A stretch of DNA of 62,975 bases, counting the filler, from Octopus bimaculoides (Eukaryota), in NCBI RefSeq assembly GCF_001194135.2. It is 5 parts of 4 records of this genome, joined end to end, with 100 filler letters (N's around TTAATTAATTAA, not from the genome) between each part and the next. Parts side by side here need not be neighbours in the genome. Positions count along the whole stretch, not along the records: positions 55,964 to 62,975 come from NC_068987.1; 4 more parts are not named here. The stretch is one strand, 5' to 3'. This document shows positions 60,665 through 61,235 of the stretch, piece by piece. Positions within the stretch are counted from its first letter, which is position 1. Each line of letters starts with the position of its first letter. The notes under the pieces are model-generated. The model saw only the letters and a list, made by a program, of their open reading frames with translations. It had not been told where the DNA came from and did no database searches. Made by a program: the position numbers and the translations under genes.

Positions 60665-61235
60665 TAATAAATCCTCGTATGCAACGGGAAACAACGTGAA
60701 TAAAAACGATGACTTGCATATTTATTCATACGTTCCAGAGGATTCGAACATAAATATGCCAATCGCTGCCATGTTTCGTCAGAGGTGAACAGCTTTGGGA
60801 GGAATATATGCTCATAATATATTCGATTCATTAGCACAAGGGACTCTGAGACAGCCAGTGTTTCGACTTCGTTGTATCTCATCAGCCAGAAGCACCACTG
60901 GACTAATAAATCTAACAAGAGCTGATGCTCTTTTTGTAATTTCAGCAAACAAATTGCTCGCTAGTCCGTACTAATGTCTGCCGAATGATAATAAATTGTC
61001 ATGTACACGGTGAACAGCGAGAATTAAAAGGATGATTTTCATATCCATTCTTAATAAGTTCTGGTGGGATTTGTAATTGCTGTTGTTTCGTCACAACTTC
61101 TCTTTTACAATGAATGTGCGTTCATAACACATTCGATTCATTAGCGCAATGGATTCTCAGACATCCGGTATTTTGACATCGTTATGTTGCGTCAGCCTGG
61201 AGCATCCTCTGACTAATAATCCCACGAGATCTGAT
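60665..61235 (-). repeat. Diverged ~310-nt tandem dimer with a hammerhead at the same position in each unit (retrozyme/satellite-like)
   Basis: attcgattcattagc anchor at 60821 and 61131; similarity visible from ~60665-60925 to ~60990-61235; second hammerhead degenerate at 61160-61195. Confidence 0.7.
60844..60891 (-). ncRNA. Type I hammerhead ribozyme with canonical core
   Basis: RNA 5'-UUCUGG CUGAUGA GAUACAACGAAGUC GAAA CACUGGCUGUC^UCAGAG-3'. Intact CUGAUGA and GAAA, GUC cleavage triplet, stem I 6 bp (with two GU pairs), stem II GAU/GUC, stem III ACA/UGU. Confidence 0.75.

What the first reader, a model, noticed from the sequence alone, without database searches (positions are those of the whole stretch)
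60665..61235. Retrozyme-like tandem: two ~310-nt units with hammerheads at equivalent positions
A second, decayed hammerhead (CUGACGC...AAAAU...GUC, stem II ACAU/AUGU) has its cleavage-equivalent site exactly 310 nt from the first, and similarity covers most of the unit. Head-to-tail repeats of a few hundred nt, each with a type I hammerhead, are the established architecture of non-autonomous retrozymes and ribozyme satellites (newt, schistosome, cricket). These are processed to monomers and circular RNAs. This locus is an aged copy, but it predicts an active family of ~310-nt ribozyme circRNAs in this genome. I am not aware of one described for octopus but cannot check.
Basis: partly seen in the sequence, partly recalled or inferred. 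Interest (0 to 1): 0.85.

Follow-up and report, generated by a model that had tools for sequence, protein, structure and literature searches.

The report
Decayed hammerhead retrozyme-like tandem repeat
This is an old, mutated remnant of a small mobile repeat (about 310 bases per unit) that carries a self-cutting hammerhead RNA motif; such elements are already known in many animals, and nothing found here shows that the family is still active.

Summary
On the minus strand, 61238-60660 holds 1.85 head-to-tail copies of a 307-310-nt unit (nhmmer E 4e-12 and 7e-6). Type I hammerhead motifs sit exactly 310 nt apart, with cleavage-site C at 60850 and 61160. The first has a complete catalytic core and helices of 6, 3 and 3 bp (0.003 such motifs expected per piece), but reaches only 21 bits against Rfam's threshold of 52. 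The second has three lethal or deleterious core changes. A third fragment (61255-61233) lies 81 nt upstream.

Two related loci turned up in public read assemblies. One is colinear with this locus and holds one unit with an intact core. The other has different flanks, 1.3-1.7 tandem units and a dead ribozyme. So the 310-nt unit is a dispersed repeat family, not a local duplication. No reverse transcriptase or endonuclease lies in the 7-kb piece.

This fits animal non-LTR retrozymes, which are non-autonomous relatives of Penelope-like elements. All copies differ by 15-40%. This locus has at most one usable ribozyme, so it cannot release a monomer or a circle. The predicted active circRNA family is unsupported, and the source genome could not be searched. 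Verdict: new, decayed member of a known kind; modest interest.

The parts
60660..61238 (-). Whole repeat array: 1.85 head-to-tail copies of a 307-310-nt unit (unit positions 229-307, then 1-307, then 1-182)
   Evidence: nhmmer with the monomer and with a family profile; gapped self-alignment; direct repeat with 310 spacing
60850..61159 (-). One complete monomer, from cleavage site to cleavage site (310 nt, 38% GC)
   Evidence: Spacing of the two cleavage-site C residues, 61160 and 60850; GC content; predicted fold -74.1 kcal/mol, z -1.9
60825..60912 (-). Hammerhead 1 domain. An outer helix pairs leader GAUUUAUUAGU (60912-60902) with GCUAAUGAAUC (60835-60825). Helix I is 60891-60886/60849-60844, core CUGAUGA 60885-60879, helix II 60878-60865, GAA 60864-60862, helix III 60861-60851, and cleavage follows C60850. 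The core is intact; helix II has only 3 bp.
   Evidence: Descriptor scan with 0.003 expected by chance; Rfam HH9 at 21 bits, below gathering; outer helix predicted by RNAfold; pair counts
61135..61221 (-). Hammerhead 2 domain, inactivated: core CUGACGC (A9>C), G10.1>A, G12>A, helix I broken. Helix II (ACAU/AUGU) and the outer helix are kept. The cleavage-equivalent C is at 61160.
   Evidence: Reading of the sequence; alignments A1 and A3; no Rfam hit
61233..61255 (-). Third fragment: the 3' half of a hammerhead (GUAACACCACUUGUC|UCAGAAUC), joined directly to the leader of unit 2. Its cleavage-equivalent C at 61241 lies 81 nt from that of hammerhead 2.
   Evidence: 17 of 23 matches to hammerhead 1, with 0.0175 such matches expected per piece; repeat family D2. 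The part upstream of 61239 is not significant on its own.
60930..60988 (-). Unit positions about 172-230 (the 'spacer'): no partner inside the window, but part of the monomer
   Evidence: L003 aligns without a break across it (profile positions 99-306, E 5e-55; one BLAST segment L003 732-983 = window 61024-60775)
60950..61436 (-). Stretch absent from the colinear locus L001. It holds the third fragment, unit 2 and most of the spacer, and is bounded on both sides by copies of unit positions about 208-228.
   Evidence: Alignment of L001 to the window
61256..61432 (-). About 175 nt of unknown origin inside the array's upstream end
   Evidence: No significant similarity to the unit or its profile

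Best explanation
This is a fossil insertion of a small non-coding retroelement of the animal non-LTR retrozyme kind, that is, a non-autonomous relative of Penelope-like elements. Its unit is about 310 nt and carries one type I hammerhead ribozyme on the minus strand.

How it worked when the family was alive (inferred from the known family, not shown here):
1. A multimeric transcript was cut after GUC by the hammerhead of each unit.
2. [quoted passage not shown]
3. A host RtcB-type RNA ligase closed them into circles.
4. The reverse transcriptase of an autonomous element copied them into cDNA longer than one unit, which was inserted elsewhere.

Shown here: the unit, its head-to-tail arrangement, the ribozyme motif, a second independent tandem locus, and the absence of coding capacity.

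Present state: the locus is dead as a source of monomers. Hammerhead 2 and the third fragment have lost essential core bases. Hammerhead 1 keeps the core, but its helix II has only 3 bp. A competing fold is predicted to be about 14 kcal/mol more stable than the hammerhead fold. At most one site could cut, and releasing a monomer needs two.

The difference in unit number from the colinear locus L001 is best explained by unequal recombination between neighbouring units.
For: - Repeat of 1.85 units, with hammerhead motifs exactly 310 nt apart.
- Hammerhead 1 has the complete core and three helices; about 0.003 such motifs are expected by chance.
- The same architecture with an intact core is present in L001, where HH9 scores 28 bits at E 1.5e-4.
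- Across four copies, 80% of the cells of helices I-III are paired in register, against 14-46% when the partners are slid.
- The 11-bp outer helix (leader against the box after the cleavage site) is predicted in U1, L001 and U2.
- L003 has unrelated flanks and carries the unit in tandem across the unit junction, so the family is dispersed.
- GC content is 38%.
- No Pfam domain appears in any frame of the piece.
- The unit in L001 is closer to U1 (80-85%) than to U2 (63-68%), and U1-U2 identity is lower than window-L001 identity. The tandem is therefore older than the split between the two loci.
- The features match published retrozymes: 150-450-bp tandem units with type I hammerheads and low GC (PMC7229834), and derivation from Penelope-like elements (bioRxiv 10.64898/2026.07.22.740005; PMC8557442).
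Against: - Both Rfam hammerhead matches are far below the gathering score of 52 bits.
- There is no covariation, though only four sequences were available.
- The hammerhead fold is not the predicted minimum-energy fold.
- The window holds fewer than two units, and only two loci were found elsewhere.
- No target-site duplication could be shown.
- No Penelope-like reverse transcriptase was seen near it, and none was tested for in this genome.
- There are no RNA data.
- About 175 nt (61432-61256) inside the array remain unexplained.
Confidence: 0.7

Rival explanations
1. The repeat is the pseudo-LTR (partial tandem) of a coding Penelope-like element, and the hammerheads belong to its terminal repeats.
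For: Penelope-like elements carry hammerheads in their pseudo-LTRs and insert as partial tandems with a fixed 3' end (PMC4209133, PMC8557442). Both independent loci here end near the same unit position (about 172-190) and differ at their 5' ends.
Against: The two hammerheads are 310 nt apart, with no ORF between them. No RT or GIY-YIG domain appears in any frame of 60100-62150, nor in the longest open frames of 55964-60110. The ribozyme has a 3-bp helix III and a short helix II, unlike the minimal Penelope type, which has no or 1-bp helix III and a 6-8-bp helix II (PMC4209133). Flanks shared with L001 are SINE-like and non-coding.
Confidence: 0.08
2. It is a local tandem duplication (a micro-satellite-like expansion) of a sequence that happens to contain a hammerhead, without any retrotransposition.
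For: Unit number differs between the window and L001 in a way that unequal crossing-over explains. No target-site duplication was found. Very few copies were detected.
Against: L003 carries the same unit, again head to tail, between flanks with no similarity to the window or to L001. A purely local duplication does not produce that.
Confidence: 0.1
3. Hammerhead 1 is a domesticated, functional ribozyme kept by selection, like the conserved intronic HH9/HH10 ribozymes of amniotes, and the rest of the repeat is debris.
For: The core is intact in both the window and L001. The 48-nt ribozyme is 92% identical between them, against 83% overall. The best Rfam match is HH9.
Against: This conservation is not unusual locally: 57 of 405 windows of the same size are at least as conserved. 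Helix II has lost two pairs that U2 and L003 retain. A more stable alternative fold is predicted.
Confidence: 0.05
4. The hammerhead-like motifs are chance matches in AT-rich repeat DNA.
For: Rfam scores are below gathering, and the shuffle z-scores of the short folds are unremarkable.
Against: About 0.003 descriptor hits are expected per piece. The motif recurs at the same unit position in independent copies, and with a full core in L001.
Confidence: 0.01

Closest known systems
Metazoan non-LTR retrozymes (Cervera & de la Pena 2020, PMC7229834; e.g. Mytilus about 350-390 nt, Acropora 220-240 nt, axolotl 330/350 nt)
   Same: One type I hammerhead per unit; head-to-tail units within the 150-450-bp range; low GC (38%); non-coding; dispersed over more than one locus; helix I of 6 bp with a further closing helix; short helix III.
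   Different: Fewer than two units here and at most 1.7 at the other locus. All copies are decayed. No RNA or circular-RNA evidence. The sequence is unrelated to any described family as far as could be checked. No cephalopod example was found in the searchable literature.
Hammerheads in pseudo-LTRs of Penelope-like elements, and their non-autonomous derivatives (PMC4209133, PMC8557442, bioRxiv 10.64898/2026.07.22.740005)
   Same: Insertions longer than one unit as partial tandems. The 3' end appears fixed and the 5' end variable (n=2 loci). The hammerhead lies in the repeated part.
   Different: No RT/EN ORF. The ribozyme is of the canonical type I shape, not the minimal Penelope type. No homology to a Penelope element was tested.
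Classical hammerhead satellites: newt satellite 2 (about 330 bp), Schistosoma Sm-alpha, cave-cricket pDo500 (as reviewed in PMC7229834)
   Same: Tandem units of a few hundred bases, each with a type I hammerhead that processes multimeric transcripts into monomers.
   Different: Those are long, abundant, transcribed arrays. This is a two-unit relic.
Rfam RF02275 Hammerhead_HH9 (conserved amniote ribozyme), clan CL00010
   Same: Best-scoring model; same topology of outer stem, internal loop, 6-bp helix I, 4-bp helix II and 3-bp helix III.
   Different: Scores of 21 and 28 bits against a gathering score of 52. There is no evidence of conservation beyond the local background.

Membership tests
Hammerhead ribozyme, type I | Conserved core: C3 U4 G5 A6 N7 G8 A9, G12 A13 A14, A15.1-U16.1, and H17 at the cleavage site | tested here: met
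   Hammerhead 1 (60885-60850) and L001 have every core base. Hammerhead 2 fails (A9>C, G12>A, G10.1>A), and L003 fails (GUAAUAA in place of CUGAUGA).
Hammerhead ribozyme, type I | Three helices around the core, with helix I open and helices II and III closed by loops | tested here: met
   Helices of 6, 3 and 3 bp in hammerhead 1. 80% of cells are paired in register over four copies, against 14-46% when slid; no covariation.
Hammerhead ribozyme, type I | Score at or above the Rfam gathering threshold of a hammerhead model | tested here: not met
   HH9 scores 21 bits in the window and 28 bits in L001, against a gathering score of 52.
Hammerhead ribozyme, type I | Self-cleavage, and tertiary contacts between loop 1 and loop 2 | not testable with these tools
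   Needs in vitro transcription. The predicted hammerhead fold (-11.8 kcal/mol) is less stable than the minimum-energy fold (-25.5 kcal/mol).
Metazoan non-LTR retrozyme | Head-to-tail repeats of a 150-450-bp unit, each with a type I hammerhead | tested here: met
   307-310-nt unit. The window holds 1.85 units with motifs 310 nt apart. L003 holds 1.3-1.7 units.
Metazoan non-LTR retrozyme | Low GC (<45-50%), non-coding, no LTR/PBS/PPT | tested here: met
   38% GC. No Pfam domain in any frame. No long terminal repeats around the array. PBS and PPT were not looked for specifically.
Metazoan non-LTR retrozyme | Multi-copy, dispersed family in the genome | tested here: inconclusive
   Two loci with different flanks were found in a related data set (L001, L003), and no more in three protein-level searches. 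The source genome is not available to the tools.
Metazoan non-LTR retrozyme | Target-site duplication at the ends of the insertion | tested here: inconclusive
   The direct repeat first taken for a duplication proved to be unit positions 208-228 of neighbouring units. No other duplication was seen.
Metazoan non-LTR retrozyme | Expression as linear and circular monomer RNA | not testable with these tools
   No RNA data. It is not known whether the Logan runs behind L001 and L003 are DNA or RNA.
Autonomous Penelope-like element (pseudo-LTR) | ORF with reverse transcriptase and GIY-YIG endonuclease between or next to the repeats | tested here: not met
   No Pfam hit in six frames of about 60100-62150, nor in the ten most complex of the stop-free stretches of at least 40 aa in 55964-60110. 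Three assembly gaps remain unseen.
Autonomous Penelope-like element (pseudo-LTR) | Minimal hammerhead: helix III absent or 1 bp, long helix II (6-8 bp), short helix I | tested here: not met
   Helix III is 3 bp with a 5-nt loop, helix II 3-5 bp, helix I 6 bp; compared with PMC4209133.
Plant LTR retrozyme | Type III hammerheads in LTRs of about 350 bp, PBS and PPT, 4-bp target-site duplication, GC >55% | tested here: not met
   Type I topology, 38% GC, no LTRs; compared with PMC4918200 and PMC7229834.

The most novel reading that the evidence does not exclude
The source genome (said to be an octopus) still holds young, intact arrays of this 310-nt unit. They are transcribed and processed into abundant hammerhead circular RNAs, which would be the first retrozyme family described in cephalopods.
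Probability: 0.15. Interest if true: 0.5.

Novelty: new member of a known kind. Interest (0 to 1): 0.3.

Why it matters
If the attribution to a cephalopod holds, this adds that group to the animals known to carry hammerhead retrozymes. It also gives a 307-nt consensus with which the whole family can be searched for. No cephalopod example was found in the searchable literature.

As it stands, it is a decayed relic of an element class already documented from cnidarians, other molluscs, arthropods and lower vertebrates. It would not surprise a specialist.

Its practical value is for annotation. The locus should be labelled as a retrozyme-like repeat, and the single hammerhead with an intact core should not be mistaken for a functional gene.

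Tried and rejected
1. **Target-site duplication.** The window has about 490 nt (61436-60950) that L001 lacks, bounded by a repeat of about 20-25 nt. I first read this as a second insertion with a target-site duplication. I rejected that when L003 and the profile showed the repeat to be unit positions 208-228 of adjacent units. Unequal recombination fits better.
2. **An older unit 'X' upstream (61590-61450), and a unit remnant in 61432-61293.** Both looked plausible by eye, but neither is significant: nhmmer finds nothing at E up to 100, and Smith-Waterman against shuffles gives p 0.24 and 0.10.
3. **Concatenated six-frame query** in the search for homologous proteins. It returned nothing, not even the known hit, so the search was uninformative.
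4. **P0002 and P0004**, long proteins that matched the spurious ORF. Their DNA is a 168-nt repeat without a hammerhead core, and Rfam finds nothing. They are unrelated.
5. **Two pattern scans of JGI metagenome contigs** for the ribozyme and for the box after the cleavage site: no match.
6. **Selection on hammerhead 1.** It is 92% identical against 83% overall, but 57 of 405 windows are as conserved.
7. **Identity of runs SRR11869384/391/394 and of assembly GCA_043792635.1.** Neither was found in the literature library.
8. **The coding-looking stretch 61540-61780 (+).** No Pfam hit.

Full report
**What is there**

All features lie on the minus strand. A direct repeat with a start-to-start spacing of exactly 310 nt is present (60802-60909 and 61112-61219, 75% identical without gaps). 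With gaps, the similarity runs from 61238-60989 to 60929-60664.

Taking the stretch between the two cleavage-equivalent sites (61159-60850, 310 nt) as a monomer, nhmmer finds the downstream partial unit at 60847-60665 (E 3.8e-12) and the upstream partial unit at 61238-61160 (E 7e-6). The array therefore holds 1.85 units (unit positions 229-307, 1-307, 1-182).

Tandem Repeats Finder misses it, because there are fewer than two copies at about 75% identity. The unit is 38% GC.

**The ribozyme motifs**

Hammerhead 1 reads UUCUGG-CUGAUGA-GAU(ACAACGAA)GUC-GAA-ACA(CUGGC)UGU-C|UCAGAG.
- It has the full core, helix I of 6 bp, helix II of 3 bp followed by an A.A mismatch, helix III of 3 bp, and cleavage after C60850.
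- A descriptor requiring the core and minimal helices finds only this site in the piece. It gave 10 hits in 3000 first-order Markov simulations, about 0.003 per piece.
- Rfam gives only a weak match to Hammerhead_HH9: 21 bits against a gathering score of 52.
- An 11-bp outer helix pairs the leader GAUUUAUUAGU (60912-60902) with GCUAAUGAAUC (60835-60825). RNAfold predicts it in U1, L001 and U2. This explains why these two boxes are the best-kept parts of the unit.

It carries A9>C, G10.1>A and G12>A and a broken helix I, so it is dead.

A third fragment, the 3' half of a hammerhead, lies at 61255-61233. It matches hammerhead 1 at 17 of 23 positions, with 0.0175 such matches expected per piece. 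It is joined directly to the leader of unit 2.

The hammerhead fold of copy 1 (-11.8 kcal/mol) is much less stable than the predicted minimum-energy fold (-25.5 kcal/mol). The minimum-energy fold pairs UGAGAU with GUCUCA. The short folds are not better than shuffles.

**Relatives elsewhere**

No tool holds the source genome. I therefore used the open reading frame that happens to run through unit 1 (60948-60664) as a probe against proteins called on public assemblies. It found two clusters.

- P0001 lies on the Logan contig L001.
  - L001 is colinear with the window. L001 6-682 matches 62139-61437 at 75%, and L001 668-1121 matches 60949-60501 at 83%.
  - It holds a single unit whose hammerhead has an intact core (HH9 28 bits, E 1.5e-4).
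- P0003 lies on contigs L002-L004, from runs of the same accession series.
  - These contigs have flanks unrelated to the window and to L001.
  - They carry the unit head to tail across the unit junction: profile positions 99-306, then 2-155, with E 5e-55 and 2e-33.
  - One BLAST segment, L003 732-983, matches window 61024-60775. This shows that the 59 nt at 60988-60930, unpaired inside the window, belong to the monomer.
  - The hammerhead of L003 is dead.

A profile search with all three translations found nothing further, and two metagenome pattern scans found nothing. Two long proteins that also matched the probe are an unrelated 168-nt repeat.

**History of the locus**

The window has about 490 nt (61436-60950) that L001 lacks. 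On both sides stand copies of unit positions about 208-228. I first took this for a target-site duplication. It is better read as unequal recombination between neighbouring units.

The L001 unit is nearer to U1 (80-85%) than to U2 (63-68%). U1 and U2 differ more from each other (65-73% identity) than the window differs from L001 (83%). So the tandem predates the split of the two loci, and L001 most likely lost a unit.

About 175 nt (61432-61256) inside the upstream end remain unexplained.

Both independent loci end near the same unit position (about 172-190) but begin at different positions (about 208 and about 99). This is what target-primed reverse transcription of a template longer than one unit would give. 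With two loci, it is only a hint.

**What it is not**

No Pfam domain is found in any frame of about 60100-62150, or in the ten most complex of the stop-free stretches of at least 40 aa in 55964-60110. So it is not the terminal repeat of a coding Penelope element within the piece.

The ribozyme has the canonical type I shape, not the minimal Penelope shape (PMC4209133).

Conservation of hammerhead 1 between the window and L001 (92%) is not exceptional against the local background, so there is no sign of domestication. Pair counts over four copies show that the register is right (80% paired, against 14-46% when slid), but there is no covariation.

**Comparison with what is known**

The features match animal non-LTR retrozymes: tandem units of 150-450 bp with a type I hammerhead, low GC and no LTR features. 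[quoted passage not shown]

The mechanism I give (cleavage of multimers, ligation by a tRNA ligase, reverse transcription of circles) is taken from those papers. It is inferred here, not shown.

In the searchable literature I found no hammerhead or retrozyme report for cephalopods. PMC8557442 notes only Naiad-type Penelope remnants there. The SINE-like repeats look familiar to me from octopus sequence, but that is memory, not a test.

**Verdict**

- The retrozyme-like reading is supported as to architecture and family type.
- The forecast of an active circular-RNA family is unsupported by what could be searched, and this locus itself cannot yield monomers.
- It is a new, decayed member of a known kind.

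Noticed in passing
62052-62132 (+), 62637-62717 (+), 57968-58066 (-); also L001 1-130: Copies of a SINE-like repeat of about 80-100 nt (81% and 79% identical). ARAGORN calls no tRNA gene in the piece. A second inverted pair lies at 56003-56086 / 57791-57874.
   Followed up: partly
58470-59090 and 59840-59995: All the stronger Rfam hits of the piece (mir-297, mir-466, mir-5014, MIR533 and others) sit on (TA)n, (TG)n, (GA)n and (CATA)n microsatellites. All are far below their gathering scores, so they are low-complexity artefacts.
   Followed up: yes
56927-56982, 58796-58853, 59308-59839: Runs of N (assembly gaps) inside the piece, all next to microsatellites. Anything lying in them is unseen.
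   Followed up: no
60882-60877 and 60852-60847 (-); same in L001: UGAGAU (core plus the start of helix II) is complementary to GUCUCA at the cleavage site. The predicted minimum-energy fold uses this pairing instead of the hammerhead fold. It could be an off-state of the ribozyme, or it could be meaningless.
   Followed up: partly
61241 vs 61160 (-): The third hammerhead fragment puts a cleavage-equivalent site only 81 nt upstream of that of hammerhead 2. It looks like a unit with about 225 nt deleted at an AGAG/AGAA microhomology.
   Followed up: partly
L005 (GCA_043792635.1, JAYRBN010000007.1) 3001-12736: An annotated 2543-aa 'protein' built from 168-nt tandem repeats (motif LVQLCFGLRRGN). 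It matched the spurious ORF by chance. It has no hammerhead core, and the organism is unknown.
   Followed up: partly
61540-61780 (+): A short stretch whose translation looks coding (…NYRPLCNRFAVETVSIQTSGVFGP…). It is conserved with L001 at the DNA level but has no Pfam match. It may be a very old transposon remnant.
   Followed up: partly
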